Source: Iphione sp. A-MEVVRFRX5 (lineage: Eukaryota). Taken from it: DNA of 64,000 nucleotides. The stretch lies in contig OZ320319.1 in NCBI GenBank assembly GCA_976226885.1, forward strand, positions 71,610,001 to 71,674,000, in the 5' to 3' direction. The notes beneath the pieces were generated by a model, which was given only the letters and a program-made list of their open reading frames with translations, did no database searches and was not told the origin of the DNA. A program made the position numbers and the translations under genes. Shown here piece after piece: positions 12,364-48,401 of this stretch (positions are counted from its first letter, which is position 1; the number at the start of each line of letters is the position of its first letter).

Positions 12364-13220
12364 TGGTCCAATTTGTGTTCGAGCTGCTTATTGTGGAGAA
12401 GAAAGCAAAACGGACATATATGAGAGAAGGTCACGTCGTTGGCAATGTGAGTTGAGGGCTCAGTACATTTTGCACTGAACCAAGCAGGGCAAGGGACGAC
12501 AGAGTCTTTCTGTAGGGTGGGGCCATCACGATTGGCCCTGGTATGAGCATTGATACACCGTTGTTTAATTGACTCGATACGTTGGGTATCTGACCATGAT
12601 AGCCTGTCGTTCCCCGTAAGGTGCCAAATTTCGACAAGCCATTCCCTGACAGGGGCCCAGCCGCTGGCCTGAACCTCTTCTGCGGTGTCTCTGATATGAG
12701 TGATGAGAGTCATAATGTCTGCAGGATATACAATGGAGGGGTCAAGTAATATACCCATGATAGAGGACACATACTGAGGAAAAGTAAATTTTCTCAAGTC
12801 CGGCTTATCAGTCTCTGACATAACAATGTAAGAGGCGGGATTCGGGCGAGCCATTTTCTTACCTACAGTTTCTAATGCTGCCGGGTACATATGAGTGAAA
12901 ATCTCTTGTATCTTGGAGGCTGCCTCAGTTTTCAAGGCAGCTGGTTGAGGTGGAGGTGACGAATCGTTGTCCTCGTCCTCGTGTACGTCTGAACTTGAAC
13001 CGGCCACAGCAGTCGACTGACCTTCGGCCATTTTGGCCGCTGCAGCACGAGTGGTCACTGTCGTGGTTGAAAATTTCTTGGTCTTTTGGGAACTCTTGGA
13101 CTCCTTGGGCTCCTTGGGGTCCAATTTGTCCAAACGGTCCTCGATGGCTTTCATCTTTTCAAGCATTTTGACCAGAATTTCGCCTTCCTCCTCGGTGACA
13201 CCTGACTTTGGGTCCGGCAT
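12243..13220 (-). CDS. Gag-like ORF1 of the DIRS/Ngaro element, 325 aa from the ATG at 13220
   Basis: Intact ORF overlapping the RT ORF by 121 nt. It contains GWAPVREW...W and a Cys/His cluster (CPAWFSAKCTEPSTH...HICPFC...H....C). The ATG context is GCAACAATG; the ORF track starts at an upstream GTG. Confidence 0.75.
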   Translation of the reverse strand: MPDPKSGVTEEEGEILVKMLEKMKAIEDRLDKLDPKEPKESKSSQKTKKFSTTTVTTRAAAAKMAEGQSTAVAGSSSDVHEDEDNDSSPPPQPAALKTEAASKIQEIFTHMYPAALETVGKKMARPNPASYIVMSETDKPDLRKFTFPQYVSSIMGILLDPSIVYPADIMTLITHIRDTAEEVQASGWAPVREWLVEIWHLTGNDRLSWSDTQRIESIKQRCINAHTRANRDGPTLQKDSVVPCPAWFSAKCTEPSTHIANDVTFSHICPFCFLLHNKQLEHKLDQCRSKKKAQQQNLQDRQQPKPWTANQPRDQRPARTDNQEW

Positions 13221-14244
13221 TGTTGCGGCCACTTATTTTTGAAGTGACCTGTACGACAGCGAAGCAATGAATGTGATCACCTATATGCTAAATATATCCA
13301 CGCAGCGGCCTCAAGCCCGATACAACAGGTGGCGGGTCTGTCTGCATCTCGTAATACCTTGCAATCCCCTAGGGAGTAGCGTACAAATATCCTAACCTAA
13401 TTGCCTGTGACCACATGTCCCGCCATATTAGACTCTGCCGACATTTCAGCATAGTTAACTTGTGAATGAAAAAAAGGAATCATACCTCAATACATACCCT
13501 CACCCACACGCACACACTCATGAACGCTTATTCCTATATGTTCGAACATTCACGCTTAAAAGAGGCTGATACATTTCTTGTAAGTTCGCATGTCAACACT
13601 GCAGAAGCAGGAAGTAAGACAATGCCACAAACAAAACTGGTACTCATCCATCAAAAGCCATTTAAAACGCAGAAGATCGTTTCATTGGTCTTACTTCCTC
13701 GTGAATGGGTGGTGTTGAGGAGAAGAGATATGAGGTCAACAATGGGGAATTTTTTTCTTCCAGAGGAGATAGAAAACCAAGGAGTAGTAAGTGAGGAGGG
13801 AGAAGGAAGTAGCAGGTCATGTGGCTAATGATGGGAGAGTTTAACAATATGAATTGAAACGTAAGGAAATGAAAGGAATCCATCTTCAGAAAGAGAAAGC
13901 GGAAGGTAAAAAAGGACAGGGTGTTCTGTTAGGCAGGATGAACCAGAAAAAAACAAGGGCAGAAGGAAGTAATGGGGAAGGTACATGATGTAGATAAACA
14001 AGGAAGTCTAAATACAGATAATACATGAAAGATGTGTACATTTAAAATATGTACCATACATGTACAATTCACCCTGTGACTGTCACATCCTTGCTCCTAA
14101 TGAAGCTGTCCCATTTTAGGGTTGTCTATAAGTCTTAAGTGCACCATTGTGTTGGCGAACATTCAGGCCGCTCAGGCCAAAAGTGTTCCCCTATCTGAGG
14201 TGTCCCTTATAATGGTGTGTCCCAGTACTACGATCGACCATTTT

Positions 14245-14278: not shown

Positions 14279-16789
14279 GTTGAACGATTTATTTCTGAAG
14301 GGTGAAACATACATCAGTGTTGTGCAGTTATCTCCAGATCTTAATCCAAGTAAACAATGTAATGAATATGATAAATGGAAAGTCGTCTGCAATACCTCTA
14401 TGCAGTCACGTTGTCATTACTATCTTGACTTATAGTAAGGATAATACTACAAAAAAGTAAATTAGACCACATCTTGGCTTTAAATAGATTGTATATATGG
14501 TCATACCATATTCCAGGAGCTATCTTACATTTTTTGTATAATTCTTTTTTCCTACTTCCTAGCAATTTGGGTTCTGCGTCCAACCAATAGACCTCCATAG
14601 CTGATCTGTCCCATTCTCTCGATTATCCTAACAATATTCTACCCCCCCCCCCATATTTCATAATCAGCCATAAAGTAGATACGATGTAACAACAATCTCC
14701 ATTTGCTTACATGACATAAAGGGGAGCTCGGCTTATACACATCGGAATTTTAAAGATCCAAGACGATATCACGCCATGACTGACTCACACCGCGAGCAAC
14801 TCACAGACATCAGCTCATCCCGTCCTGCTAGACGATGCGTCACCTTCTAACTTCTTGGATATATTTATCCAGACATTGTCAATAGCATGAGGCAGTGTTG
14901 CCTACCAACATGGCCACCAACTAGCTATGTTGAAATCTTCATACCCCTTAGGATTCTTGAGAGGTATATTAAATAAACATGGAAGATTAGTGGATGAAGG
15001 AATTCTCACTTCAAATGAGGCACGCGCCAGGCAGGCCAGTGACACAAGGTGGATTATTTGAGAATAAGAAGGAATTATTCAATTATAATGGAGAGTGGCA
15101 CGAATCAGCCATGTGGCCAGTTAGCAGTTGTACACGATGTGGATAATTATTATTTAATGATATGGAGGAATTAGCATTTAATATGAGCAGTGAAAAGTTG
15201 GTTCATGGTGCGAGTTGGCAGTGACACCAGGTGGCGATTGTGCAAATTCCTGCAATAGCATGGCCTGGTTAAGACACAGATCCTCGTCCTCCCGAAAATC
15301 ACATACATGAAACCTCTATGCTTTCACCTAATTCAAAAAAAAAATTCATAGTAAGGGTTTTCGCTTGATTATAATTCTCTTTTCACAAAAAAAGCCTCTG
15401 ATGAACAAGCTTTCATGGTTGACCACTCACCTTTTGAATACTTTTACCAACGACGCTTCCGACATACCACAAAACTAAGCGTAAATTTATAGCCGTATTC
15501 CGTAGATACTGAGGAGGGAAAATGGGATTGGAAAAAGCCGTACGACAGGAAGGCATTCACACACACCTTTAATTGAAAATACCTGAGTGTGTTTTTTAGT
15601 TCCTAGTAATTTGACTACGTTGCATTATTAGGAAAAACTACGTGCTCCTGTCGTTTCTTTCCAGACTGTTTGTTTGTTTATTCAGGCCTCCGGAGTTCCG
15701 CTTTGTATGATCCGTTTATTGGACTTAACATCCCACCACATTCCCCAGTTGCACAATGTGACTAACTGCATGTATGTCATTGCGCTCGTGCATGGTAGCA
15801 TGTGGTAGGAATGTGTGCAGGCTTGGGATGGTAGACGGTGTATCTTGAGTGGGAGATGGTGACACACAGATGGAAAAAATACACTGACAGATGGGATGTA
15901 TACAGTCGACGCCTCACCAACCAGCACCCTATATACAACTCAAACAAAGCATAACTCAGATTACTCCAGGTCTGGTTTGATCTGTCTTTATTGTATGGAC
16001 ACTTGTACAGAAGCACAAGTTCGGAGCAGACTGAAGAGTGAAGTTGGCTCAAAGCTTTTACAGAATCATCCCTGGGCCAAAATACGAATTTAATCCCTTA
16101 TCCCTAGGTCACATATCCACGTGGTAGGTCACATATCCACGTGGTAGGATTAAGTGCCTATTACCTCTTATACTGTCTAAACATGCTTCGTGTTGATGCC
16201 TATTTCCTCTCATCAGCCAGTTAGCAGAGGTACATGAAGCATCTTTCATATTACTTGTAAGATACTGAGCTATTCACTACTACAGTTAATTGCAATAAGG
16301 TTAACCCACATCTTTACACATATGATCCAGCTTTACCTGCAATATGTGTAAATGCTAATGCTTATATCTGTAAACTGTATAATAAACAATTTTTCTAAAG
16401 TCTTGATATCATAAACAGAATCATGTCCCAAATAACACAACTGTTACACATCTGTCATTCACGTGCATGCATCTTCTGAACTTAGGCTGGGTTTCTATGC
16501 ACGTGTGTTTTCACAGGTGTGTAAGTGTGTTTTCAATGTGTTTTGGGGGAATACAAAATGTACATGCATGTATCCATGTGCACATGAGGCATGTGCTGTG
16601 CTTGCAAAGGTGTGAATGTGTGTTTTCAACGTGGGACATGCCCCATTTTCCATGATATCATGGGCAGCTTTCTCCATAGAAGTACACAAAAGGTGATGAT
16701 GAAAGAGTATTGTTAGCTGTGTTTCATGCAAAAAGAACATATTGTTGTACAATACCGCATGGCACCAAACATTACTGCACATGTAATCA

Positions 16790-23294: not shown

Positions 23295-23461
23295 NNNNNN
23301 NNNNNNNNNNNNNNNNNNNNNNNNNNNNNNNNNNNNNNNNNNNNNNNNNNNNNNNNNNNNNNNNNNNNNNNNNNNNNNNNNNNNNNNNNNNNNNNNNNNN
23401 NNNNNNNNNNNNNNNNNNNNNNNNNNNNNNNNNNNNNNNNNNNNNNNNNNNNNNNNNNNNN
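23295..23461. other. Assembly gap (Ns)
   Basis: Run of N. Confidence 1.
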
Positions 23462-29065: not shown

Positions 29066-29586
29066 CTCCAACCACTGCCCCTTCACGTTCCTCACCTACT
29101 CCACCTCAACCACACAGGTGTGTTAGGATGGTCTGCTCTTACCAATAGCAACAGAGGAGAACACCTCCTGTGAACAGGAAAATTGACAACAGTATAGATT
29201 TATCCTCTCCTCTGTGGAATTACATTAAAGAGGGATTAGTCAGAATTAGACAATTATTGGTTGACTTCTGTAAGGCAGTGGTATATAGGAACAAACAATA
29301 AATCATAAAGTGTCTGATTAAATGAAAAGGACGTACGTTTATATTTGTTACGTAGTAGATACGACACAGGGCATTTTAACATGGAACCGTAGAACCTGAT
29401 TATTTTTTACTATTCTTTGCTCTTGTGCGTTATCTTGTACGTCCGATGGACTGAATGTAATGAAATGTTTTTAAGACGCCTGTCATGATAGAATGTTTAT
29501 GCATGATTTCTTGATTAGCGCCACAATAAGTCAATATCACACTCCATTAAATCATATTTTTCTCCGCTTGGTCTCTCTGTCACTGG

Positions 29587-29610
29587 CTCTCTCTCCCTCC
29601 CTCCTTCCCT

Positions 29611-29669
<59 letters not shown>

Positions 29670-29785
29670 AGGTTTCCTTCATTCCCTCTTTCTCACCTCC
29701 TCTATGTTTCTATCATGTTCCTTGTTTGTTCTCCCTCAGTTCCTCCTATCTCTCTGTCTCTTTCTCACTGTCGCTCTCTCTCTCT

Positions 29786-29818
<33 letters not shown>
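29587..29818. repeat. (CT)n microsatellites and pyrimidine-rich tract
   Basis: Directly visible. Confidence 0.95.
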
Positions 29819-30792: not shown

Positions 30793-31340
30793 TGTAGGGT
30801 AGCGTAAGGAGGGCTAGACGTACTACATGTACTTGAGAAGGGCCCAAGCAGTTTAAGGAGAAGAAAGTAGGGGCCCGAGCATATAGGGGAGGGGCCCGAA
30901 CAACTGTAGTGGGGCCCAACCACTTTTGTACAAGGGCCCAGCTGTTGCACCGAATGCCCCCTACTTTGACTGACAGATGAGACCAGAAAGAGCAATGTTG
31001 TATCAATTTTATTCCATATTTGGATACAGTCACCGGGTCACATGACGTGTATACTTGCTATAAATAAGAGCCCTGTGTGGCAAATAAACCAGTCTGCACT
31101 TGGATTACGTTGTGGCTGTTGTCTCTTCAGGGAATGCTAGGAACAGATACTCACTTGAACTTACCTTAGGGTTAGCCTATTGGAGTAACGTATTGGATTA
31201 ACACATGAGGATTATTAAGCCAGGTAATTAACTACCATAGGAGGATTTACCAAGTGGGAATAACAACACACATACGACACTTGGGGATATTACTTTATTC
31301 CAAGGAGTAACTCAAAGGAGATTTAAATACGCAGATTACA
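30793..31340 (+). repeat. 5' LTR (548 bp)
   Basis: Runs TGTAGGG...ATTACA, with TATAAATA at 31059 and AATAAA at 31083. Matches 42092-42639 except at 3 positions. Confidence 0.98.
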
Positions 31341-31341
31341 C

Positions 31342-31360
31342 TGGTGTCAGAAGTGGGATT
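31342..31360 (+). promoter_or_regulatory. Primer binding site complementary to the tRNA-Leu 3' end
   Basis: TGGTGTCAGAAGTGGGATT is the reverse complement of AATCCCACTTCTGACACCA, the 3' end of eukaryotic tRNA-Leu. It starts 1 nt after the LTR. Confidence 0.9.
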
Positions 31361-31371
31361 CCCCAGACAAG

Positions 31372-32235
31372 ATGGCTACAGCTTATGTCTCTGTGGATGA
31401 TGAAGTGCAGATTCGTGTCACCAGCCCGGCACCTGACACAGAAGAGGAGGAGCACTTTGAGATTGCTCCAGAAGAGCCACTCAAGATCAACACTTTGAAG
31501 CCGGAGCGGTTTGACGGTAAGACTGTTGATTGGGACAGCTGGATCAGTCAGTTTGCGGAGTGGGCAACCGCTTGCAGGTGGGGGGAGGACACAAAATGTT
31601 CTGCATTGACCCTGTCCCTGACTGGGACAGCCCGCATGTACTATGGGGATCTCCCTGCCGAGGAGAAGAGGGACTATGCTAGCAGGGTGGCCGCCCTTGA
31701 GCGAAGATTTGGCAGAAGGAGGGATCGCGTTGTGGCAATGCAGAAGCTATCAGGCATGAGACGTCAGAAAGATGAAGATGTGAGGGACTTGGCCGATCGG
31801 GTTAGGAGGCTGGTACGTACAGCCTACCCCGACGTGACGGGGGAAACTAGGGAATTGGCAGCTGTCGCGGCATTCCAGAGGGCCCTAGCAGACTCCCTCC
31901 ACTTGAAGTGCCTCGAAGCCAAGTGTACCACGCTAGATAACGCCGTCCAGGTGGTGGAGACTCAGGAACGTTTTCGGGCAAAGGCAATTAACACCGTACA
32001 GCAGGCTCCCATTCAGACCCCTATCGCCTCAACCCCAGCTGGGTGGAAAAAGGAGATGGAGGAGCTCATAGCTCAGGAAATCCGGAAACTGAGGGAAGAA
32101 GCTAAGACCCCAGAGGAGGGAAAGCCAAGGAAGCCCCGGTTCACTGGATGCTATCAGTGTGGACAACATGGCCACTTTAAGCGGGATTGTCCCCAGCTAC
32201 CCGCATCGGGAAACGCCAACCAGCCGGCTCAGTAG
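31372..32235 (+). CDS. gag: Gag (287 aa) with capsid-like region and CCHC knuckle
   Basis: KPERFDG...W...W...L..SLTG.A capsid-like motif and CYQCGQHGHFKRDC zinc knuckle. Confidence 0.95.
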   Translation: MATAYVSVDDEVQIRVTSPAPDTEEEEHFEIAPEEPLKINTLKPERFDGKTVDWDSWISQFAEWATACRWGEDTKCSALTLSLTGTARMYYGDLPAEEKRDYASRVAALERRFGRRRDRVVAMQKLSGMRRQKDEDVRDLADRVRRLVRTAYPDVTGETRELAAVAAFQRALADSLHLKCLEAKCTTLDNAVQVVETQERFRAKAINTVQQAPIQTPIASTPAGWKKEMEELIAQEIRKLREEAKTPEEGKPRKPRFTGCYQCGQHGHFKRDCPQLPASGNANQPAQ

Positions 32236-32933
32236 GCCAGGAGGGCGCGGCTGATCCAGTCCCCATGGGGTGTATAATGGAACAAGGCCAGGGGCCACAC
32301 TTACAGGTAAGCGTGAGGGGTGGCAACTATATGTTTCTGGTGGATACAGGGGCCGAAGTTTCCATTGTTAACCCTGAGGTGGTCCCTGGCCTAGAAGGTG
32401 ACAGGGGGGAGATCCGGATTACTGGGGCGGGTGGGCATGTAATCCCCACACTAGGAAAAGAGGTCCTAGAGGTAGAAGTAGCAGGTAAACAGTTTTCCCA
32501 TCCTTTCTTGATAGCTCAAATTGGGGAAGAGGGTATCTTGGGGAATGATTTCTTAAACCACCATCAGGCAGTCATAGACCTGGCTCATGGGAGGGTGTGT
32601 TTTGATAGTAGGTCCGGGGGGCAGCGATGCCCTGAGAAGCCGACTGCCCTGCGTGTGGCCCATGATGTGTCTTTGTCCCCAGGCGAGGGGACGGCTGTCC
32701 CCCTGATTAACCCTGGGGGTGCATCCTTCCTGATAGAAGGGGTGGATGAGAAGCAAATGGGGAGGGGGATCTTCGGGATTAGGAGCATTGTTAGAGCCAC
32801 CCTCCCCCTTTGGAATTTGGGAGATCGGGATGTGATGCTGACGCAGGGGACCCTATTAGCCATGGGGCACCCAACCTGTTGCTCAGAAGTCACGAAAGGG
32901 GCCCCTGAAAACAGGGTCCGGATGATTCAGTAG
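32208..32933 (+). CDS. pol: Aspartic protease region of pol, in the -1 frame relative to gag
   Basis: FLVDTGAEVSIV active site and GILGNDFL motif. A G GGA AAC slippery site lies at 32208-32214. The ORF ends at TAG 32931-32933. Confidence 0.92.
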   Translation, partial: GKRQPAGSVGQEGAADPVPMGCIMEQGQGPHLQVSVRGGNYMFLVDTGAEVSIVNPEVVPGLEGDRGEIRITGAGGHVIPTLGKEVLEVEVAGKQFSHPFLIAQIGEEGILGNDFLNHHQAVIDLAHGRVCFDSRSGGQRCPEKPTALRVAHDVSLSPGEGTAVPLINPGGASFLIEGVDEKQMGRGIFGIRSIVRATLPLWNLGDRDVMLTQGTLLAMGHPTCCSEVTKGAPENRVRMIQ

Positions 32934-35858
32934 GTGTCTGGGGCAGTGTTTGAGGGGTTATTGGCCCAGACAGCAGGACGACTCCAAGAGGGAGAACAGG
33001 TAGCCCTTGCCAAGGTCCTAAGGAAGCATAAAGCTGTGTTCGCTCGGTCGAAGGGGGACCTGGGGCAGACCGACCTGGTACAACATAGGATCTACCTACT
33101 AGACCCCCACCCTATTAAGCAGCCCCCTAGGCGGCTCCCCATAGCCCGGCGGCGAGAGGAGCGTGAGCTGGTGGCGGAGATGAGGGCGCTGGGGGTGATC
33201 CGGGAGAGCAGTAGCCCTTGGTCCAGTCCGGTGGTCATGGTCCGAAAGAAAGACGGCACCACCCGTTTCTGCGTTGATTATCGGAAGTTGAACCAGCAGA
33301 CGAAGGTCGACGCCTACCCCCTGCCACGGATAGATGACTCACTGAGCACGTTGGCAGGCGCCCGGTACTTCTGTTCCTTGGATTTGGCATCAGGCTACTG
33401 GCAGGTCCGGATGCACCCCGAGGACCGCGAAAAAACGGCTTTCTCTACATCCGTAGGACTGTACGAGTTCACCGTAATGCCGTTTGGGTTGGTGAATGCC
33501 CCGGCCACGTTCGAGCGGTTGATGGACACAGTATTACGGGGTCTTGCCTGGGAGCAGTGCCTCGTGTACCTGGACGATATCTTAGTGTTTGGGCGAGATT
33601 TCCCAGAGACACTAGAAAGGCTGGACCGCGTGCTAAGTCGAATTGCCCAGGCTGGGTTGAAGCTCAAACCAACCAAGTGCCAGTTGTTCTTGGAAGAGGT
33701 CGGTTTCCTCGGACACCTTGTCTCGCGAAAGGGGGTGGCGACTGACCCTGCTAAGACCAAATGCATCGTCGACTGGCCGACCCCACGATGCACTACTGAT
33801 GTTCGCGCCTTCTTGGGGATCTGTTCCTATTACCGGCGTCATGTGCCCCGGTTTGCCAATGTAGCCGCACCCCTAAACCGTCTTACCAGTGCAAGGGTGA
33901 GGTTTACCTGGGGGCCAGAAGAAGAGTCTGCATTCCAAGAACTGAAACGGGCACTGAGCACCAGTCCCATCCTCGGCTATCCCCAACCTAATGGGAGGTA
34001 CTACTTGGATACGGACGCCAGTAACGTGGGGCTGGGCGCTGTCTTGGCGCAGGAACAAGAGGGCCAGGAAGTAGTGCTAGCCTACTATAGCCGGAGCCTC
34101 AGCGAGGCAGAACGACGCTACTGCGTCATGCGACGGGAGCTCCTTGCCGTTGTGGCAGCTCTGAAGCACTTCCACTTTTACCTCTATGGGCAGGATGTAA
34201 CCGTGCGCACTGATAACGGGGCTGTCAGCTGGCTCAGCCGGATAAAGGACCCAGAGGGACAGCTAGCCCGTTGGTTGGAAAGGATTGGCCAATATCGATT
34301 GCAGCTCGTTCATCGTGCAGGGCGACTGAATTCCAACGCTGACGCTCTGTCTCGTCGAGTTTGTCGGCAGTGCCAACAACCCCACCTTGAACCTGAGGAA
34401 GAGGAGGTGATTCCAGTAAGGGTGGTGACCCGCAGCCAGACTACCCCCGCTCCGGGTCGGGAATTACGTCGGGACCAGCTACAAGACGAGACTGTAGGGC
34501 CAATCCTGCGACTGAGAGAAGAGACCACGGATCAACCTTCATGGGAAGCAGTGTCTGCCCTGCCAGCCGCGGCGAAGGCTTTATGGAGACAGTGGGACCG
34601 GCTGACGGTCAACGACGGGCTATTACAGCGGCGCTGGTATGGGCTGGGGAGCGATCCCACCCGGTTGCAAGTAGTACTCCCTGCAATACGACAGGAAGGG
34701 GCCATCAAGGAAGTGCATGCTGGACGAACCGGAGGACACTTGGCCACCGATCATACCACCTATTTGGTGTCGCTTGCTTACTATTGGCCAGGGATGCGAA
34801 AGGATGTTGAAGCCTTCTGCCGTCGCTGTCACTGTGCCCTCCTGAATATCAGTCCTCAGAAACCGCAAACTGCATTGAAGACTTACCTGCCCGGTGAGCC
34901 AATGGAACGCTGGTCAATGGACGTGGCGGGGCCCCTACCAGAAACGAAGAGGGGGAATCGCTATGTCCTTATGGTGGGTGACCATTTCACCAAATGGATA
35001 GAGGCCTTCGCCATGCCCGACCAGAAGGCCAGCCGGGTAGCCGCTCTGCTAGCTGAAGAAGTCATTGCACGATACGGGTGCTTCTTAGAGATCCATAGTG
35101 ATCAAGGCACCAATTTCTGCAGTGAAGTCCTGGTGGCGCTGTGCCAGTATTTGGATATAAAGAAGACCCGGACTACGCCGCGCCACCCCCAGAGCGACGG
35201 TTTCATTGAGAGGAGCTTCCGTACTATGAGCCGAATGATAAAAGCCCATTGCCATGAAGTGCGGGATGATTGGGACGAGGCTTTACCGTTTTTGATGATG
35301 GCCTATCGGGCCTCGCCGCAAGCTAGTACTGGGTATACCCCGAACTTCCTGATGTTTGGGCGGGAGATCATCCTCCCAGTGCATGCGTGGGACGGACTTC
35401 CACGACACACTATGGAGGAGCGTCCCCTCCCGGAGCAGGTGGCTGATGTCGGGCGTCGGATGCAGGCCGCGTACAAGGAGGTAAGACGCCATTTGCAGCG
35501 GGCCGCGAGGACCCAGGCCCGGGCGTACGACCGCCGAGTGCAGGGGCACCCATTGCAGGATGGGGACGCGGTTTGGTTGCACGAGGCTCAGCCCCCAAAG
35601 GGGCGTAGTCCAAAGACACACTTCCCTTGGACAGGGCCCTGGGCAGTAGTCAGGCGGCTCGATGACGAGCGTTTGGTGATACAGCGGACGCAAAAGGCGA
35701 AGCTGAAAGTGGTCCATAGGAACCGGCTACGACGTTACCAGGGGGACGATCTTCCCCGGTGGATCCTGACACTAAGGAAGAAGATGGTAGCGTCGCAGGA
35801 GAATGGAGAGGTCAAAAAGAAGACTTCGGGCGTGGGGGGAACCAATCCCCCGGAGTAG
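32934..35858 (+). CDS. pol: RT-RNaseH-integrase region of pol, same frame as the protease, after a single TAG
   Basis: RFCVDYRKLN, LDLASGYWQ and YLDD (RT); DTDAS, RELLA, TDN and NADALSR (RH); H..GH..YYWPG..CRRC, MDVAGP, HSDQG, DGFIER and WTGPW (IN). Confidence 0.97.
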   Translation: MSGAVFEGLLAQTAGRLQEGEQVALAKVLRKHKAVFARSKGDLGQTDLVQHRIYLLDPHPIKQPPRRLPIARRREERELVAEMRALGVIRESSSPWSSPVVMVRKKDGTTRFCVDYRKLNQQTKVDAYPLPRIDDSLSTLAGARYFCSLDLASGYWQVRMHPEDREKTAFSTSVGLYEFTVMPFGLVNAPATFERLMDTVLRGLAWEQCLVYLDDILVFGRDFPETLERLDRVLSRIAQAGLKLKPTKCQLFLEEVGFLGHLVSRKGVATDPAKTKCIVDWPTPRCTTDVRAFLGICSYYRRHVPRFANVAAPLNRLTSARVRFTWGPEEESAFQELKRALSTSPILGYPQPNGRYYLDTDASNVGLGAVLAQEQEGQEVVLAYYSRSLSEAERRYCVMRRELLAVVAALKHFHFYLYGQDVTVRTDNGAVSWLSRIKDPEGQLARWLERIGQYRLQLVHRAGRLNSNADALSRRVCRQCQQPHLEPEEEEVIPVRVVTRSQTTPAPGRELRRDQLQDETVGPILRLREETTDQPSWEAVSALPAAAKALWRQWDRLTVNDGLLQRRWYGLGSDPTRLQVVLPAIRQEGAIKEVHAGRTGGHLATDHTTYLVSLAYYWPGMRKDVEAFCRRCHCALLNISPQKPQTALKTYLPGEPMERWSMDVAGPLPETKRGNRYVLMVGDHFTKWIEAFAMPDQKASRVAALLAEEVIARYGCFLEIHSDQGTNFCSEVLVALCQYLDIKKTRTTPRHPQSDGFIERSFRTMSRMIKAHCHEVRDDWDEALPFLMMAYRASPQASTGYTPNFLMFGREIILPVHAWDGLPRHTMEERPLPEQVADVGRRMQAAYKEVRRHLQRAARTQARAYDRRVQGHPLQDGDAVWLHEAQPPKGRSPKTHFPWTGPWAVVRRLDDERLVIQRTQKAKLKVVHRNRLRRYQGDDLPRWILTLRKKMVASQENGEVKKKTSGVGGTNPPE

Positions 35859-36871
35859 CCGGAGCCAGGACGAATTGGGGGTATGAGCACCCAGGTGGCA
35901 CTCAAAAAGTTCATGGAAGGTGGTGGAACACCTGGAGCGTGTAGCGCTCAAAAGTTCCAGTAGGACATGACGGACGTCCTGAGGATCATCGGCATCCAAA
36001 ACGAGTCCGTGTAGGGGTAGACTCCCTGTAAGCGTCCAAAAAGTTCTGGGAGGTGAAAGCGAGGAGAGCCTGGAGCTGCTAGAAACTTAGAATGCTCCTC
36101 GGAAGGAGAGAGTAGACATCCTGGGGGCCATGCGGGCCCTGAAAAGGTCTAGGAGGAGGACGGACATCCTGGGACGCTTAAAAAGGTCTGGAGTGGGAGG
36201 ATGAACATCCCAGAGTGCACAAAAGAGCTTATGGAATGTGCAGGGCTATCGGAGAGGGCCAGGAGTTAGACATCGGAAGACTGGAGAACGATCTCCAGAG
36301 GGGTCGATAGGTAGGCCCCTGAGAGGAGCAACCGAGAGGGTGACTAGGACGAGAACAGACTGTTCCACAAAGAGTTAGGTTCCCCCCCCTTTTACCACCA
36401 AGGGGTGGGAGAGAAACCGGCCTCCACACCGTCGCCGCACGGAACGCTATCCAAACTGCTGGTCATCCCCGCTGAGGGAACGCTTGGGCCAGGACGTAGC
36501 CCATGGCTTCCGCAAGACAAGAGATCCATCGTGGGCCTGGTGAGGAAGAGTAGCACTACGTATGGATAGCAACGGGCTGGCCAAACCACGGTCTGAACCA
36601 AGCTGCCGTCCCTTTCCTCTAGGAGAAGGCGGAGACCAAGATGCTGTCCACTTCCTCTGGGGGCACCTGCTGCTCGGCTGCTAGGATAAGGTAAAAGATA
36701 ATCATCCCATCTAACCGACGGCCCCTGACATTAGGAAGTAAATTCCCCCCCTTTTTCCCTCTGAAAGGACCGACAAAGAGAATCAAAGGTTAGGAAATTT
36801 ATTCATCAGCAACAGTAAAAATATACACTTGAGTATATACAATGGCTACATACAACATGCAAGCCCCAGGG

Positions 36872-38082
36872 TTAGTCATCCTCCACCAGGATGGGGTGGC
36901 ACGCCAAATCCCCTGCCCGCACCTCCAGCAACCAGTTCACGATCCCAGTGGGCAGGTCATCAACCAAGGCCCGGCCAAAGAGGGGGCCTGTCTCGGGGGA
37001 CCCCACTGGTGTTGGGCGCGATGGGGTGTCGCAGGAAGACAATGAGTCTGGTGACGGGGAACGCGGGGAGGAGGACTCGGAGGAGCCGTCCGAGCTGAGG
37101 ACGGGAAACCAGTCGCAATCGGAAGAGGCTTGTCGGGGTGGTGTCCGCGTTGAGAACAACCCAAAAGATTCGTCAGAAGAGGAGTCGTAGTGAGGACTCC
37201 AGGGATCGAGCATCTCTGTTGTCCATGACCCCGGAGACCAGGAACGCTCGCTGGGCGAGGAAACGAAGGGCCGGGCCGGTGGAGACGACGGGATGTATGC
37301 AGGGGAGCGGTCGTCCAGCTGGCTCAGGTAGGCCTCTACGGAGCGGGGGCTCACCTCGGGAGATACCGCCTCCGCCCGGACCGAGTAACAAGGGGAGGTG
37401 GGAGGAGCCAGCGGCGTCATCGGAATGGCCGAACATGGGGAAGATGGCTCGATGGGGTGCACACTGATGGTAACCCGGTGGTAGGGCCCAAAGAGCTGTA
37501 CTTGGCCCGGAGCAGGAATGAACAGAGGGTCGGTGAGGACTGGGTAGAGTCCGAACACCCGGATCATTGGTCCGGGCGTCCCTATGTCCAGGGACCTGTA
37601 GTAAGTATCCGGCGGGAAACTCCTGGGAGGAAGAAAGAAGAAAGAAGGTTAGAAAAAAAAGAAAAAAAAAAAAAAAAAAAAAAAAAAGAGTTCTCTTACC
37701 TGGTGAGCAACCAACTGACAACTGGCAACAGTAGGAAAACCAGCAGGTCACAACTGGTAATCGTGGACGGCTCCAAAGGAAACGGAGACTCTACCTATCA
37801 TCCGCTGGAGGGTACCCTGCTAACTCCCGGGCCAAGGCCTCAATGTCAGGGGACTGACACGGCTGGGGCAGAGATAGGGATGCTCTGGAATATCAGGAGC
37901 AAGGAAAGTGTAAGCAACCATTCTTCCCTCACCCCCCTCCTGTTTGGAAATAGCAAGGATACACAGCAAAAAGTATGCAGCACTAAGAAATCTTACCGGT
38001 CGGACCACACAGGATCCCTGGACTCCCAAGGGAGAAAACATCCATGCTGGGTCATGCCTGTGAGATAGGGAGGTAATTCCAT
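36872..38082 (-). CDS. Predicted spliced antisense accessory gene, 308 aa (exons 38082-37997, 37884-37795, 37622-36872), Ser/Pro-rich, function unknown
   Basis: TATAAATA at 38158-38151 and a GCCATGG start. GT-AG introns 37996-37885 and 37794-37623 keep the frame (86+90+751 = 927 nt). AATAAA at 36803-36798. Confidence 0.6.
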
Positions 38083-38150
38083 GGCTGGAAGGCCCAAGTG
38101 TACGCCTAAGTGTCTTCGCGACGACTGGCGCAGCAGACCGCGCGGTGCGA

Positions 38151-38900
38151 TATTTATAGACGGGTACAACTGTCGCTCGGGCCCCGTGAGAAACACAGAC
38201 ACCGCGCGGAGGGCCCGACCGGTACCTGAACGCTAGCTCGCTCGGGCCCCGTGTAGAAAACGAAAACGAGCAAAACGGGCCCGATCGATAAGCAGACTGG
38301 GAGAAAAAGGTTTTTCGTGGCAGAAAAATATTCGTAAAATTACCTACAGCGAAAAAGGGCCCGACCAAGTACGAGGTTACGCTCGGGCCCCCAAACCGGA
38401 AGAGGCCGAAAGGTAAACATCCGCCGAGCCTCGTTTTGATCTCCAGAAGCAGCAGACGAGTTTTCGTGTCAATAAAAACTGCAAAATTTAAGGAACTAAA
38501 GAAGAATCAACCCGAAGAGAAGGAGGAAATGGATCAAGACCCATCCTAGCATCATCAAGGACGTCCCTTTGAAGAGGGGGGAGGAAGCAGAAGCCAGCTT
38601 CGTGGGAGAAAAGACCGACCGGCGTTGGGGCCCGACAAGCAGAAGACCTGAGGGCCCGAGCGGAGGAGTACGCTGATCTGTGTGAGTGTAGCGAATCTTC
38701 CCTTCTGTCGGGCCCTGCCTCTGTTGTTTTTTCGTGGAGTACGCTGATCTGTAGCGAATATCCCCTTCTGTCGGGCCCTGCCTCTGTTGTTTTCGTGATG
38801 CAGCACGGGCCCGAGTGATACCGCGATTGTTGTACCTTTGGGGGGCCCGAACACCGAGCATTCGTTGTGATCCTATAGGGCCCGAGCAGCAGGGCCCGAG
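38151..38900. promoter_or_regulatory. Candidate internal bidirectional promoter with 14 GGGCCCGA motifs
   Basis: Non-coding interval between two divergent ORFs. All 14 GGGCCC hexamers in it extend to GGGCCCGA or TCGGGCCC. Confidence 0.6.
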
Positions 38901-38964
38901 CCCCAAGCCTTGTCAAGACCTCCAGTAAGTAGTTGTCTTCCCCGTACTACCTGGCCATCCCATC

Positions 38965-40932
38965 ATGCCGCGTCCCATCATTGGCATGCCAAAGGTAAAG
39001 AGGGTGTTGAAGAAGGATGACCCCATCCCAGAGGGGACTAAGTTGTGTCAACTCTGCACTGTAAGGCGGCCCTTTTTTCCCGGGGATTCCATGGAACGCC
39101 ACCTGGATGCAGTCCACCGGGGGAAAAGGAGCCGGCGCATGTACTGCCTGTACTGCCCAGGTGTGATAGGGGATGTGCATTCCTGGGCCGCGCATGTGCG
39201 GCGCTACCACCCGTGGGCTGCTCAAATGGGCCTGGTAGAGCCGAGGTATCGGGATCTCTACGACGTGACACCCAAGGCGGACCCGCACGTACCTGATGAC
39301 GAGCTGACCCCGATCATCTTGAGAGCTCGCACTCTGAGGGCCGACGGATGGGCCCTGGGGGAGGCAGAAGCGGAGGACATGTTGGCCAACGCCCCGCGTC
39401 GCTCCTCGCCCCCACGTGTAGAGCGGGAAACCCGAGCCTCGTCAAGGCGGCGGAAGGCCTCGGCCGGCACCCCGAACGAGAGGAGTAAGCCTGCCAAAAG
39501 AGGGAGGAGTACAGCAGTCGTCCCACCCACTACACCTCCACTGGGTCAGGCGGAGGGTCACGGGGATTCCCCGGCAAGGGTGCGACAGCCTAGCCAGGAA
39601 GTGGACGTCCCGTATGCCGCCGATCGCCCGCCCAGTATGGCTACCCCCACCTTGTCCAAGGCCCCCTCTACAACCTCTGCCGCTACCCCCCGGGGGAAGA
39701 GTAGAGCCGCAAAGAGAAGGAAAGGGGCGTCGGTCGCCCAGCCTACTGCACCTCCCCCGGGTGACGGGGAAGGCCGTGAGAACCCCCCAGCAAGGACGGG
39801 CCAGCCCTGCCAGGGGGCGGTCGCCCCTTACCCCGCCGGTCATCTACCCAGTGCGGCCACCCCTGCCTTGCCTGGAGCCCCCCCTTCAGCTGAAGGGACA
39901 CCAGCTACTGACGACCCAGGTGATGCCGCCCCCACCTGGAGGCTACCCGCAACCTGGGATCAGGGGGAGGTTGATGCAGTGGTCTCGCAACTGCAGCGAG
40001 CAGTAGAACCTCCCCTGGTAGGCCTCCTGTCGGCCGGCGACACGACCCAGACAGGTAGGGCCCCAGCTACGCGGGACCCCCTCTTATGCCAAGGGGTCGC
40101 TACTCCCTGCCCAACGTCGGGAGAGTGGAGCGGGAGGCCTTCTGGCACGTACCAACCATCTACCCCGTCTCGGGACACTGTTCCGGGGTGGGGAGAGCTG
40201 GAGATGGGCCCCCTCGGCCCAGGATTTGTGCTCTCAGGGACTGAGGAAACCCTACCGGGTCCCTCTACGTCCGTGCAGGGGCGACTACCCCGTATGGCTC
40301 AGCGCCTCTTATCGCCTGACCGGGCTGGCCCTGCCGCTGCCCGGGCGATGGACATCCTCGATGGGCTAGCCCCACCCTACTTCACAGTCGCCCGCGCCTC
40401 TACCCCCCCTGCACCTGTCCGCCTGCCCTCCACTATGCCGTGGCCACCTCGGGGTTGGGAGGCATGGAGCCCCACCCATCGGCTAATGGCCTGTGTCTCT
40501 GTTGCGTGGGTATTATTTCTGGCAGAGGGAGACGTGCAGGCCCCCAAGTCCTTGCTGACACCGTTGCAGCGGCACCCCTGGCTATTACTCCCCGGGGTCA
40601 CCATCCCCACTGCGGCCGACTGGGGCAGCTTGGAGGCCACCATTGGGCGACACAATCGGGCGGTGGATGCAGCGGAGGGATTACTAAAAGGTTTGCAGGC
40701 CCAAGTGGGGGATCAACAGAAGCCACCGGTGGAGGCCCGACAATGGAGGCAGGAGGCCAGCCTAGCGAGGTCGGCACGCGAACAGCGTAACCCAACCCTG
40801 GCTGACATCTGTGCGTTTGCTCCGCCCTGGCAAAGTCGGCTTGACTTGCAGGACATTTGGCCAGAGGCAGCACTACCGACCCACTCCGGCTCCCAGGCAG
40901 AGTACTCCCCCTTAGCATCGCGCCAACAGTAG
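38965..40932 (+). CDS. Accessory ORF, 655 aa, with two N-terminal C2H2-like zinc fingers, basic patches and a Pro-rich middle
   Basis: C-x2-C-x14-H-x4-H (CQLC...HLDAVH) and C-x2-C-x12-H-x4-H (CLYC...HVRRYH). The ORF is uninterrupted and lies inside the LTR pair. No signal peptide is evident. Confidence 0.8.
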   Translation: MPRPIIGMPKVKRVLKKDDPIPEGTKLCQLCTVRRPFFPGDSMERHLDAVHRGKRSRRMYCLYCPGVIGDVHSWAAHVRRYHPWAAQMGLVEPRYRDLYDVTPKADPHVPDDELTPIILRARTLRADGWALGEAEAEDMLANAPRRSSPPRVERETRASSRRRKASAGTPNERSKPAKRGRSTAVVPPTTPPLGQAEGHGDSPARVRQPSQEVDVPYAADRPPSMATPTLSKAPSTTSAATPRGKSRAAKRRKGASVAQPTAPPPGDGEGRENPPARTGQPCQGAVAPYPAGHLPSAATPALPGAPPSAEGTPATDDPGDAAPTWRLPATWDQGEVDAVVSQLQRAVEPPLVGLLSAGDTTQTGRAPATRDPLLCQGVATPCPTSGEWSGRPSGTYQPSTPSRDTVPGWGELEMGPLGPGFVLSGTEETLPGPSTSVQGRLPRMAQRLLSPDRAGPAAARAMDILDGLAPPYFTVARASTPPAPVRLPSTMPWPPRGWEAWSPTHRLMACVSVAWVLFLAEGDVQAPKSLLTPLQRHPWLLLPGVTIPTAADWGSLEATIGRHNRAVDAAEGLLKGLQAQVGDQQKPPVEARQWRQEASLARSAREQRNPTLADICAFAPPWQSRLDLQDIWPEAALPTHSGSQAEYSPLASRQQ

Positions 40933-42078
40933 GTGGAGATTGTAGCCGCTACCTTAGAGACCTTTCATGGGGAAGGGACCGACACAGGGACATAGGGGTG
41001 GGGTATATTTTGTGTAATCTAACGGTAACCCCGACTGTTCTGCTGGAAGGCTAAAAGAAAGAGGACTGTACCTCCCAAAAAGAGAATTTTTGATGGATGC
41101 TGTGCTCAGGTGTTACCAGATAATGAGGTGTTGTCGGACTCTGTGGGGGGGATTTGATGTTGTTTATCCAAGAACAGAGGGAACTGGCGGATAAGGCATA
41201 CCAGGTGTTAGGTGATTACTATAAGTCGTTCTGTGATCAAGGTGTTGATTATATGTAACCACAAAGGATACTGATGACGTTTCTGTAGGGGGGGGGCAAA
41301 ATGGATATGCGCCATACTGTGATTTGAGAAAAGAAAACTACAGAAGAGGACTGTACCTCCCAAAAAGAGAATCCGTGTAAGTGAAGTGATTAGATGTTGC
41401 CGGCCTATGTGCCGCTGGTGGTGTTGACAGTACTTACCCAAGCGAGTGGTGGCAAAGCAGTGTGATACCAACATGACGGGTGTTGCCAAGCGATCAGGAG
41501 TGATTTGATTATGTACCAGTGACGACGTTAAGGATGTTAATAGTATTTACCCAAGATTATGTGCCATTGATGATGTTAAGAGTGTTGGCAGTATTTACCC
41601 AAGTGAAAAGTGGCAAAGCGGTGTGATAGCGACATGACGGGCGTTCCCAAGTGATCAGGTGTGGCTAGATTATGTGACTGTGATAGACGTTACAATTTCA
41701 CCACCCCGTTACGATCTGATCAGCTGTTGTTATCAAATATGCCACTACTACTGTTATAGCTTATCATATTACTGTGAACAATCAATTCTCGTCTTGTTGT
41801 GATTTTCTCGGGTTGTTACTCAGACAGGCATGATGGCCTTGTGTTTACCACTGTTTTGTTAAAAATTTGGTCTGTTGATGCTATCAAGTGTGATATTGTT
41901 AGAGGGGCCTATTTTCAAGTTGCTATCAAGTATGTCGTTACGATTTTCTCAGGGTGTCCCCCAGATGTTGTTTTCCTAGCTGTGATAGGTGTGGCCGCCT
42001 CGCGTTCGCCGTTGTTCTGTTATGATTTGATCCGTTAGTGCTATCAAGTGTGACATTGTTAGAGGGGCCTATTTTTTT

Positions 42079-42091
42079 AAGCAGGGGAGAG
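42079..42091 (+). promoter_or_regulatory. Polypurine tract
   Basis: AAGCAGGGGAGAG immediately precedes the 3' LTR. Confidence 0.85.
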
Positions 42092-42639
42092 TGTAGGGTA
42101 GCGTAAGGAGGGCTAGACGTACTACATGTACTTGAGAAGGGCCCAAGCAGTTTAAGGAGAAGAAAGTAGGGGCCCGAGCATATAGGGGAGGGGCCCGAAC
42201 AACTGTAGTGGGGCCCAACCACTTTTGTACAAGGGCCCAGCTGTTGCACCGAATGCCCCCTACTTTGACTGACAGATGAGACCAGAAAGAGCAATGTTGT
42301 ATCAATTTTATTCCATATTTGGATACAGTCACCGGGTCACATGACGTGTATACTTGCTATAAATAAGAGCCCTGTGTGGCAAATAAACCAGTCTGCACTT
42401 GGATTACGTTGTGGCTGTTGTCTCTTCAGGGAATGCTAGGAACACATACCCACTTGAACTTACCTTAGGGTTAGCCTATTGGAGTAACGTATTGGATTAA
42501 CACATGAGGATTATTAAGCCAGGCAATTAACTACCATAGGAGGATTTACCAAGTGGGAATAACAACACACATACGACACTTGGGGATATTACTTTATTCC
42601 AAGGAGTAACTCAAAGGAGATTTAAATACGCAGATTACA
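42092..42639 (+). repeat. 3' LTR (548 bp)
   Basis: Copy of 30793-31340, followed by the ATAT TSD. Confidence 0.98.
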
Positions 42640-48113: not shown

Positions 48114-48401
48114 AGATACAGCACGAGTAGAGCACTCTACGCGATATATTACTGTATAATCATCGAGGCAATGCCAAGAGGATTATACAGTAATATATCA
48201 AGTACATGCTCTACGAGAGCTGTATCTCANNNNNNNNNNNNNNNNNNNNNNNNNNNNNNNNNNNNNNNNNNNNNNNNNNNNNNNNNNNNNNNNNNNNNNN
48301 NNNNNNNNNNNNNNNNNNNNNNNNNNNNNNNNNNNNNNNNNNNNNNNNNNNNNNNNNAGTCATGCCTCCCTTCTCTCTCTGTCTCTCTCTCATTCTCTCT
48401 G

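What the first reader, a model, noticed from the sequence alone, without database searches (positions are those of the whole stretch)
38179..38897. Fourteen exact copies of the 8-mer GGGCCCGA in 720 bp, in both orientations
GGGCCC starts at 38179, 38211, 38244, 38277, 38357, 38385, 38628, 38652, 38710, 38773, 38807, 38843, 38878 and 38892. Nine read GGGCCCGA and five read TCGGGCCC. Chance expectation for a given 8-mer in this span is well under one. Only 38710 and 38773 are explained by a local ~65-bp tandem duplication; the other flanks differ. The first four are spaced 32-33 nt apart. This looks like a homotypic binding-site array (inference).
Basis: seen in the sequence. Interest (0 to 1): 0.8.

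Follow-up and report, generated by a model that had tools for sequence, protein, structure and literature searches.

The report
Binding-site array inside a gypsy retrotransposon
Fourteen perfect copies of GGGCCCGA fill the gap between two back-to-back extra genes inside a young jumping gene (a Ty3/gypsy retrotransposon), and the same motif sits in that element's main promoter, so it is most likely a docking array for one DNA-binding protein that runs an internal promoter.

Summary
There are 14 exact GGGCCCGA sites (9 on +, 5 on -) in 38177-38899. Local shuffles give 0.07. All 14 GGGCCC cores carry the GA extension, against 0 of 17 cores elsewhere outside the LTRs. Flanks are random apart from one 63-bp duplication and one older, decayed 65-66-bp duplication.

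The array lies inside an intact 11.85-kb Ty3/gypsy LTR retrotransposon (30793-42639; LTRs differ at 3 of 548 positions). It fills the space between two divergent accessory genes:
- A minus-strand gene (ATG 38082, canonical intron, stop 36872). Its core promoter, TATAAATA-N22-CCAGTC, copies the LTR core promoter at identical spacing.
- Sense ORF3 (38965-40932), a protein with two N-terminal C2H2 zinc fingers. Related elements carry a homologous ORF3.

The LTR U3 holds five GGGCCC[GA]A sites, in helical phase, upstream of its TATA box.

Best reading: a homotypic array of sites for a double-strand DNA-binding protein, acting as an internal divergent promoter/enhancer co-regulated with the LTR. 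The binding factor is unknown; it could be a host factor or the ORF3 protein.

No sibling copies, RNA data or motif database were available. Binding and conservation are therefore untested.

This is a new variant of a known kind, of moderate interest.

The parts
30793..31340 (+). 5' LTR (548 bp, TG...CA) of a Ty3/gypsy element; 4-bp target-site duplication ATAT on both sides
   Evidence: Direct repeat at offset 11299 with 3 mismatches
30840..30941 (+). U3 cluster of five GGGCCC[GA]A sites (two are exact GGGCCCGA), spaced 31/21/20/22 bp, 125-219 bp upstream of the LTR TATA box
   Evidence: helical phasing R = 0.96 at 10.5 bp
31059..31094 (+). LTR core promoter TATAAATA-N22-CCAGTC
31342..31361 (+). 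Primer-binding site starting TGG, one base after the LTR
   Evidence: Read from the sequence. The tRNA identity (Leu-CAA-like 3' end) is from memory only
31372..35858 (+). gag (zf-CCHC), protease, RT-RNaseH-integrase
   Evidence: Pfam hits. Pol relatives are metazoan Ty3/gypsy elements, best 53% identity
36872..38082 (-). Antisense accessory gene. Exon 1 is 38082-37997 (ATG in the context GCCATGG). The intron 37996-37623 has a GTAAGA donor, a CTAAC branch site, a run of 35 T and a CAG acceptor. The last exon is 37622-36872 and is in frame, giving a 279-aa Ser/Pro-rich product. An AATAAA lies about 70 nt past the stop. An alternative in-frame 54-nt middle exon is 37753-37700
   Evidence: No homologues and no Pfam family
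38123..38158 (-). Internal antisense core promoter TATAAATA-N22-CCAGTC, with the same boxes and spacing as the LTR
   Evidence: 3 matches in the window (2 LTRs plus this one), 0.00 expected
38177..38390 (.). Cluster A: six GGGCCCGA sites (orientation - + - + + -), starting 19 bp upstream of the antisense TATA box
38628..38899 (.). Cluster B: eight GGGCCCGA sites (+ + - - + + + +), ending 66 bp before the ORF3 ATG and 22 bp before a CCAGTA Inr-like site at 38922
38687..38812 (+). 63-bp tandem duplication that accounts for sites 38708 and 38771
38965..40932 (+). ORF3, 655 aa. It has two N-terminal C2H2 fingers (C28, C31, H46, H51; C61, C64, H77, H82), a Pro/Ala-rich middle and a C-terminal WPPxGW..SP..R motif
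42079..42091 (+). Polypurine tract next to the 3' LTR
42092..42639 (+). 3' LTR with the same five-site cluster

Best explanation
The array is a homotypic cluster of recognition sites for one sequence-specific double-strand DNA-binding protein. The extended consensus is GGGCCCGA[G/C]C, read asymmetrically, so a monomer is the likely binder. It forms the regulatory region of an internal divergent promoter inside a Ty3/gypsy LTR retrotransposon. Cluster A lies immediately upstream of a TATA-Inr core promoter on the minus strand, which would transcribe a spliced antisense accessory gene. Because that intron is antisense to the genomic RNA, it survives retrotransposition. Cluster B lies immediately upstream of the zinc-finger gene ORF3. 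The same motif is clustered in the U3 enhancer position of the LTRs, so one factor would switch on the LTR promoter and the internal promoter together. Shown here: the enrichment, the invariant core with random flanks, both orientations, the location inside the element, the duplicated core-promoter architecture, the canonical splice, Kozak and polyA signals, and the shared motif in U3. Inferred: that a protein binds, that transcription starts near 38126 (minus strand) and 38924 (plus strand), and which protein it is.
For: Enrichment is 14 observed against 0.07 expected, and the GA extension is on 14/14 cores against 0/17 elsewhere. Flank identity is about 25%, apart from the duplications. TRF finds no tandem array. 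An older 65-66-bp duplicate kept both motifs intact while the rest of the unit diverged. The element is a single insertion unit: 548-bp LTRs with 3 mismatches, a 4-bp target duplication, and gag-PR-RT-RH-IN. TATAAATA-N22-CCAGTC occurs only in the two LTRs and on the minus strand at 38158-38123. An in-frame two-exon antisense ORF has canonical signals. The five U3 sites lie upstream of the LTR TATA box and are in helical phase. The LTR and the internal region share nothing beyond the motif, so the array is not a copied piece of LTR. CpG observed/expected is 1.04 in the array against about 0.6 around it.
Against: There is no transcript, binding or reporter evidence. No sibling or orthologous copy was found, so conservation across copies is untested. 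On the sense side there is no TATA box at the LTR-type spacing, only a CCAGTA; ORF3 could instead be expressed from a spliced LTR transcript, since plausible acceptors exist at about 38740 and 38803. Relatives that carry ORF3 place it 230-270 bp (L124, L125) or 1.2-2.2 kb (L001, L123) after pol, with no such array. The array is therefore not required for ORF3 expression in general. Fourteen perfect sites with no weak variants is unusual for host enhancers. The antisense protein has no homologues and is of low complexity.
Confidence: 0.6

Rival explanations
1. The sites are bound by the element's own ORF3 protein through its two C2H2 fingers. This would make a self-encoded transactivator or autoregulatory circuit acting on both the LTR U3 and the internal promoter, as Tas does in foamy viruses. 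It is a special case of the best explanation in which the factor is named.
For: ORF3 starts 66 bp after the last site. Its N-terminus aligns ligand for ligand with paired C2H2 fingers: weak PDB matches to INSM1 (E = 0.035) and CTCF, and the P0123 repeats. The eight zinc ligands are invariant in ORF3 homologues of three related elements. The motif is asymmetric and 8-10 bp long, a size that two or three fingers could read. All sites are perfect, as expected for a single dedicated reader. The motif is present in both U3 and the internal region.
Against: There is no binding test. The structure model of the finger region is of low confidence (pLDDT 55). Pfam zinc-finger hits fall below threshold. 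Relatives with ORF3 show no matching array next to ORF3, and their LTR motif clusters differ or are absent. L123 has two GGGCCCA sites in its U3 although its fingers are quite different, which fits a shared host factor better.
Confidence: 0.15
2. The array is an insulator or anti-silencing boundary, not a promoter. Like the Su(Hw) array of Drosophila gypsy, it would be a dense row of sites for a host architectural zinc-finger protein. It would shield the accessory genes, or the element as a whole, from neighbouring chromatin.
For: It is a dense homotypic array of similar size (14 sites in 720 bp, against 12 sites in about 350 bp in gypsy, from established knowledge; Su(Hw) and gypsy in PMC3384341). 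It sits in the same superfamily of elements. It is CpG-rich.
Against: The motif is unrelated to the Su(Hw) site. The position is between divergent genes and abuts a TATA-Inr, not in the 5' leader. The same motif in the LTR lies in the enhancer position upstream of the TATA box, which is a promoter-type arrangement.
Confidence: 0.1
3. The array is a by-product of local duplication with no selected function: repeated short duplications or slippage spread a seed motif that has not yet had time to decay.
For: Two duplication events are visible (63 bp, and 65-66 bp) and cover six of the sites. The element is young (LTRs about 99.5% identical). LTR retrotransposons often carry repeats in non-coding parts; L001 and L123 do.
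Against: Eight sites have flanks with no detectable similarity to any other site. TRF finds nothing. In the decayed 65-66-bp pair the 16 motif positions are all intact while roughly a third of the aligned positions differ. The motif recurs in the LTR, which shares no other similarity with the array. Sites occur in both orientations.
Confidence: 0.08
4. The function is at the RNA level. The GC-rich palindromes would act as dimerisation or packaging contacts in the genomic RNA, like retroviral dimerisation initiation sites.
For: GGGCCC is self-complementary. The region folds more stably than shuffles (z = -4.2).
Against: The extra stability follows trivially from inverted copies pairing with each other. 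In the predicted fold the motifs lie in stems, not in hairpin loops. The GA extension is conserved on either strand, which has no meaning for one RNA strand. The location is 3' of pol, not in the leader. There is no Rfam match.
Confidence: 0.04

Closest known systems
Su(Hw) binding-site array (gypsy insulator) of the Drosophila gypsy retrotransposon
   Same: It is a dense homotypic row of about a dozen sites for one zinc-finger-type DNA-binding protein, carried inside a Ty3/gypsy element and moved with it (PMC3384341; site number from established knowledge).
   Different: The motif is different. The position is different: the 5' transcribed leader there, but between two divergent accessory genes 3' of pol here. 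Here the sites also occur in the LTR U3 and abut a TATA-Inr core promoter. Insulator activity was not tested.
Foamy-virus internal promoter with the transactivator Tas
   Same: A second promoter lies inside the element, upstream of accessory genes, and carries the same responsive elements as the LTR U3. An element-encoded DNA-binding protein lies just downstream (PMC8670036, PMC4929722).
   Different: Here the element is a Ty3/gypsy retrotransposon, not a spumaretrovirus. ORF3 has no similarity to Tas. The best-supported internal core promoter points antisense. Binding of ORF3 to the sites is only a hypothesis.
Antisense genes of retroelements (HTLV-1 HBZ, spliced and antisense; antisense extra ORFs of plant Tat-type Ty3/gypsy elements)
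   Same: An accessory ORF lies on the opposite strand in the 3' part of the element. Its intron can persist because it is antisense to the genomic RNA (established knowledge; not checked in papers here).
   Different: HBZ is driven from the 3' LTR, whereas here a dedicated internal TATA-Inr promoter copies the LTR core promoter. There is no sequence similarity to any of these proteins.
Repeated enhancer motifs in LTR U3 regions
   Same: The five in-phase GGGCCC[GA]A sites upstream of the LTR TATA box are an ordinary U3 enhancer layout. Relative L001 has 13 GGRACGA sites in its U3.
   Different: The unusual part is the second, larger, non-homologous cluster of the same motif deep inside the element.

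Membership tests
Ty3/gypsy LTR retrotransposon (context of the array) | Two near-identical LTRs ending TG...CA, flanked by a short target-site duplication | tested here: met
   548-bp LTRs with 3 mismatches; ATAT on both sides
Ty3/gypsy LTR retrotransposon (context of the array) | gag with CCHC knuckle, then protease, RT, RNase H and integrase in that order | tested here: met
   Pfam hits; 7936 pol relatives
Ty3/gypsy LTR retrotransposon (context of the array) | Primer-binding site after the 5' LTR and polypurine tract before the 3' LTR | tested here: met
   A TGG... stretch starts one base after the LTR, and AAGCAGGGGAGAG lies before the 3' LTR. The matching tRNA was not tested
Homotypic transcription-factor binding-site cluster | Motif over-represented against composition-matched shuffles | tested here: met
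   14 observed against 0.07 expected
Homotypic transcription-factor binding-site cluster | Core conserved, flanks not; both orientations used | tested here: met
Homotypic transcription-factor binding-site cluster | Lies next to a core promoter | tested here: met
   On the antisense side, TATAAATA-N22-CCAGTC lies 19 bp from the first site. The sense side has only a CCAGTA
Homotypic transcription-factor binding-site cluster | Sites retained in sibling or orthologous copies | not testable with these tools
   No copy of this family turned up in any collection
Homotypic transcription-factor binding-site cluster | A protein binds the motif | not testable with these tools
   No motif database or wet assay was available. 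The literature search gave only plant TCP factors for GGGCCC, which do not exist in animals
gypsy-type Su(Hw) insulator | Su(Hw) consensus sites in the 5' leader | tested here: not met
   The motif and the position are both different
Foamy-virus-type internal promoter / transactivator circuit | Same responsive element in the LTR U3 and in an internal promoter | tested here: met
Foamy-virus-type internal promoter / transactivator circuit | Element-encoded protein that binds those elements | tested here: inconclusive
   ORF3 has two C2H2 fingers. Binding is untested and the structure model is of low confidence
Foamy-virus-type internal promoter / transactivator circuit | Homology to spumaretroviral Tas or pol | tested here: not met
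   No homologues of ORF3 beyond finger-level matches; pol is Ty3/gypsy
Decayed tandem repeat / minisatellite | Head-to-tail units with evenly conserved sequence | tested here: not met
   TRF finds none in 38100-38950; flanks are at chance identity; there is no periodicity
Retroviral dimerisation/packaging palindromes | Palindrome shown in hairpin loops of the leader, on one strand | tested here: not met
   Motifs are in stems of the predicted fold, occur in both orientations, and lie 3' of pol

The most novel reading that the evidence does not exclude
This invertebrate-type Ty3/gypsy retrotransposon would run a complex-retrovirus-like circuit. Its own two-finger protein, ORF3, would read GGGCCCGA in both the LTR U3 and a dedicated internal divergent promoter. 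It would thereby control its own gene, a spliced antisense gene and genomic transcription. ORF3 would then be the founding member of a family of retrotransposon-encoded zinc-finger regulators, already seen downstream of pol in at least four related elements.
Probability: 0.15. Interest if true: 0.8.

Novelty: new variant of a known kind. Interest (0 to 1): 0.5.

Why it matters
Regulatory site arrays in transposable elements are the raw material from which hosts recruit enhancers and insulators. Complex regulation, meaning internal promoters, antisense genes and self-encoded activators, is usually thought of as a retrovirus trait. This element combines four things in one 11.85-kb unit: an LTR enhancer, a second non-homologous cluster of the same motif, a copied core promoter pointing antisense, and a conserved zinc-finger accessory gene. 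That gives a compact, testable case of how a retrotransposon wires extra genes to its own control signal. The 8-mer is sharp enough (14 perfect sites) to make pull-down of the factor straightforward.

Tried and rejected
- **Sibling copies.** Exact look-up of five ORFs found nothing. Word searches with ORF3 and the antisense protein found nothing. An exhaustive HMMER search with ORF3 gave three weak hits. Two are bacterial or low-complexity repeats and spurious (P0121, P0122). One is a marine protein made of paired C2H2 repeats, related to ORF3 only through the fingers (P0123).
- **Collection scans.** Scans with ORF3 in metagenomes and with pol in viral contigs found nothing.
- **Metagenome scan for three spaced GGGCCCGA sites.** It returned 120 or more loci. 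Most are GC-rich (median 69% GC) and none shows any similarity to the element. About a dozen low-GC contigs hold 7-19 copies at spacings that are mostly multiples of 9 or 18 nt, which reads as Gly-Pro-Glu/Asp collagen-like coding repeats. Both groups are unrelated to the element by blastn.
- **Array as a copied LTR fragment.** Rejected: only motif-sized matches of 10-12 nt.
- **Poly-A at 37653-37687 as the tail of a nested retroposon.** Rejected. It fits better as the polypyrimidine tract of a minus-strand intron, which has a GTAAGA donor, a CTAAC branch site and a CAG acceptor.
- **Same principle in relatives.** L001, L123, L124 and L125 carry ORF3 homologues but no motif cluster next to ORF3.
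- **Helical periodicity of the internal array.** None.
- **Known RNA families.** None.
- **Plant TCP site II (GGNCCC).** This was the only literature match for the core. It was set aside because pol and its relatives are metazoan.
- **Searching papers for the raw 8-mer.** Only primers turned up.
- **Structure of the finger region.** pLDDT was 55, too low for a fold search, so none was run.
- **Host identity.** The contig is not taken for human. It has an intact Ty3/gypsy element, flank CpG observed/expected of 0.6, and its nearest pol relatives are in invertebrate-type assemblies.

Full report
**Observation.**
The whole window has 18 copies against 0.86 expected. In 5000 dinucleotide-preserving shuffles of 38100-38950 alone, the mean was 0.07 and the maximum 3. 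Every GGGCCC core in the array carries GA on one side. None of the 17 cores elsewhere in the window outside the LTRs does (p = 4e-9). There are no one-mismatch variants inside the array. The consensus extends to GGGCCCGA[G/C]C.

**Is it one decayed repeat?**
No. Tandem Repeats Finder reports nothing in the interval. Pairwise identity of the 40 flanking bases is about 10 of 40, which is chance, with two exceptions. The 63-bp duplication covers 38708 and 38771 (34/40). The pair 38177/38242 belongs to an older 65-66-bp unit (38165-38230 against 38231-38296). In that unit all 16 motif positions are intact while roughly a third of the aligned positions differ.

**Context.**
The array lies inside a complete Ty3/gypsy LTR retrotransposon, 30793-42639.
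- The two 548-bp LTRs differ at 3 positions, end TG...CA and are flanked by ATAT.
- gag (CCHC knuckle), protease and RT-RNaseH-integrase follow in the usual order.
- Pol relatives are metazoan elements, the best at 53% identity.
- The element is GC-rich (55-60%) in a host background of about 40% GC with CpG observed/expected of 0.6.
- I do not take the contig for human.
- The 6.2 kb between pol and the 3' LTR is extra, and the array sits in its middle.

**The left neighbour: a minus-strand gene.**
Read on the minus strand, a TATAAATA box at 38158-38151 is followed after 22 bases by CCAGTC. This is exactly the arrangement and spacing of the LTR core promoter at 31059-31094. The composite pattern occurs three times in the window (two LTRs plus this site) against 0.00 expected. 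Forty-four bases after the A of the CCAGTC element (about 38126) comes an ATG in the context GCCATGG (38082).

The gene continues as follows:
- An 86-nt coding exon ends at a GTAAGA donor (37996).
- The run of 35 A on the plus strand is, on this strand, a polypyrimidine tract. It is preceded by CTAAC and followed by CAG (acceptor 37623).
- The next exon continues in frame to a stop at 36872, with an AATAAA about 70 nt beyond.

The product is 279 aa and Ser/Pro-rich, with no homologue and no Pfam family. A second GTAAGA donor at 37699 allows an alternative in-frame 54-nt middle exon that encodes a hydrophobic stretch. The gene is a model from signals only. GC3 of 0.71 is weakly consistent with coding.

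**The right neighbour: ORF3.**
ORF3 is 38965-40932, 655 aa. It has no Pfam family at threshold and no homologue in the word search. The exhaustive search gave three weak hits. Only P0123, a protein of repeated paired C2H2 fingers, is meaningful.

ORF3 residues 28-82 align ligand for ligand with those repeats, and weakly with the paired fingers of INSM1 and CTCF. A structure model places helices where the recognition helices should be, but its confidence is low (pLDDT 55).

Related gypsy elements fetched through pol hits carry an ORF in the same place.
- L001 14841-17606 matches ORF3 in two collinear blocks (E = 9e-5 and 2e-3).
- L123 11547-13550 and L125 4664-5689 share the finger pair, with all eight ligands invariant.
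- L001, L123 and L124 share a C-terminal WPPxGW..SP..R motif.

ORF3 is therefore a conserved accessory gene of this clade. I found no paper describing it.

**Geometry.**
The first site starts 19 bp upstream of the antisense TATA box. The last site ends 66 bp before the ORF3 ATG and 22 bp before a CCAGTA that resembles the CCAGTC initiator. The array thus fills the 883-bp divergent intergenic space. Its CpG observed/expected is 1.04 against about 0.6 everywhere else.

**The same motif in the LTR.**
U3 holds five GGGCCC[GA]A sites (two are exact 8-mers), 125-219 bp upstream of the LTR TATA box. They are spaced 31, 21, 20 and 22 bp, so they lie on one face of the helix (R = 0.96 at 10.5 bp). The LTR and the internal region share no similarity beyond 10-12-nt motif matches. 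The two clusters are therefore independent solutions using one motif.

**Interpretation.**
An invariant asymmetric 8-10-bp core, used in both orientations, next to core promoters and repeated in U3, is what a row of sites for one double-strand DNA-binding protein looks like. The most economical function is an internal divergent promoter/enhancer co-regulated with the LTR. The antisense side is well supported by the copied TATA-Inr. The sense side is weaker, because ORF3 could also be reached by splicing from the LTR transcript. The factor is unknown. A host factor is the default, and relative L123 also has two GGGCCCA sites at the start of its U3. The element's own ORF3 fingers are an attractive but untested candidate.

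**Relatives.**
None of L001, L123, L124 or L125 has GGGCCCGA arrays. In L124 and L125, ORF3 follows pol within about 250 bp. The array plus the antisense gene is therefore a lineage-specific addition. L001 has 13 GGRACGA sites in U3. L123 has about 35 GGAYCACA sites between the LTR and gag. Homotypic motif rows are thus common in this clade, but their motifs and positions differ.

**Rivals.**
- A Su(Hw)-like insulator is possible, but the position and the U3 arrangement look promoter-like.
- Neutral duplication explains at most six sites.
- An RNA-level role is unlikely. Orientation is mixed, the motifs pair into stems rather than loops, and no RNA family matches.

**Limits.**
There were no sibling copies, no transcript data, no motif database and no binding data. 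Collection scans led nowhere. N stretches were left alone.

Noticed in passing
window 32931-32933 and 32233-32235: The protease and RT ORFs are in one frame, separated by a single TAG in the context CAGTAGG. The gag stop has the same context. This is either programmed read-through or a nonsense change in this copy.
   Followed up: partly
window 35880-36240: Just after pol there are about six loose copies of AAAAGKTCYRGGAGG, and several of GACGGACRTCCTG, at 45-100-bp spacing. This is a second, degenerate repeated-motif zone.
   Followed up: partly
window 30840-30941 and 42139-42240: The five U3 sites are spaced 31/21/20/22 bp, in phase with the DNA helix (R = 0.96 at 10.5 bp). The internal array shows no such phasing.
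   Followed up: yes
window 38160-38900: CpG observed/expected is 1.04 in the array, against 0.56-0.67 in the other internal segments of the element and about 0.6 in the host flanks (0.42 in the LTR). The array is a small CpG-island-like patch, and every site contains a CpG.
   Followed up: partly
window 37753-37700 (minus strand): An optional in-frame 54-nt exon of the antisense gene would insert a hydrophobic stretch (LLVFLLLPVVSWLL), giving a possible membrane-anchored isoform.
   Followed up: no
window 41059-41087 / 41344-41372, 41507-41603, 41865-42075: The 3' untranslated part of the element has a 29-bp exact repeat, a 48-bp tandem pair and an 80-bp pair 160 bp apart.
   Followed up: no
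window 10420-13232 (minus strand): Two adjoining ORFs (647 and 329 aa) carry an RT domain only. This is probably a non-LTR retrotransposon remnant.
   Followed up: no
window 29572-29818; 23295-23461; 48230-48357: A long (TC)n microsatellite lies just upstream of the element, and there are two N stretches (left untouched).
   Followed up: no
L001 8343-8500 and 21864-22020: The LTR U3 of the nearest relative (53% pol identity) starts with 13 GGRACGA sites upstream of its TATA box. This is the same layout with a different motif.
   Followed up: partly
L123 2870-3460: About 35 one-strand copies of GGAYCACA at 9/12/21-nt spacing lie between the LTR and gag of another relative. The same element has two GGGCCCA sites at the start of its U3 (15973-16016).
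   Followed up: partly
L103 8533-9958, L081 4003-5181, L115, L109, L041: Low-GC metagenome contigs hold 11-19 GGGCCCGA copies at spacings that are mostly multiples of 9 or 18 nt, typically a plus-strand block followed by a minus-strand block. They look like Gly-Pro-Glu/Asp collagen-like genes facing each other and are unrelated to this element.
   Followed up: partly
L124 2586-4441 and 17605-19460: Each LTR region of this relative contains about ten 144-bp tandem repeats.
   Followed up: no
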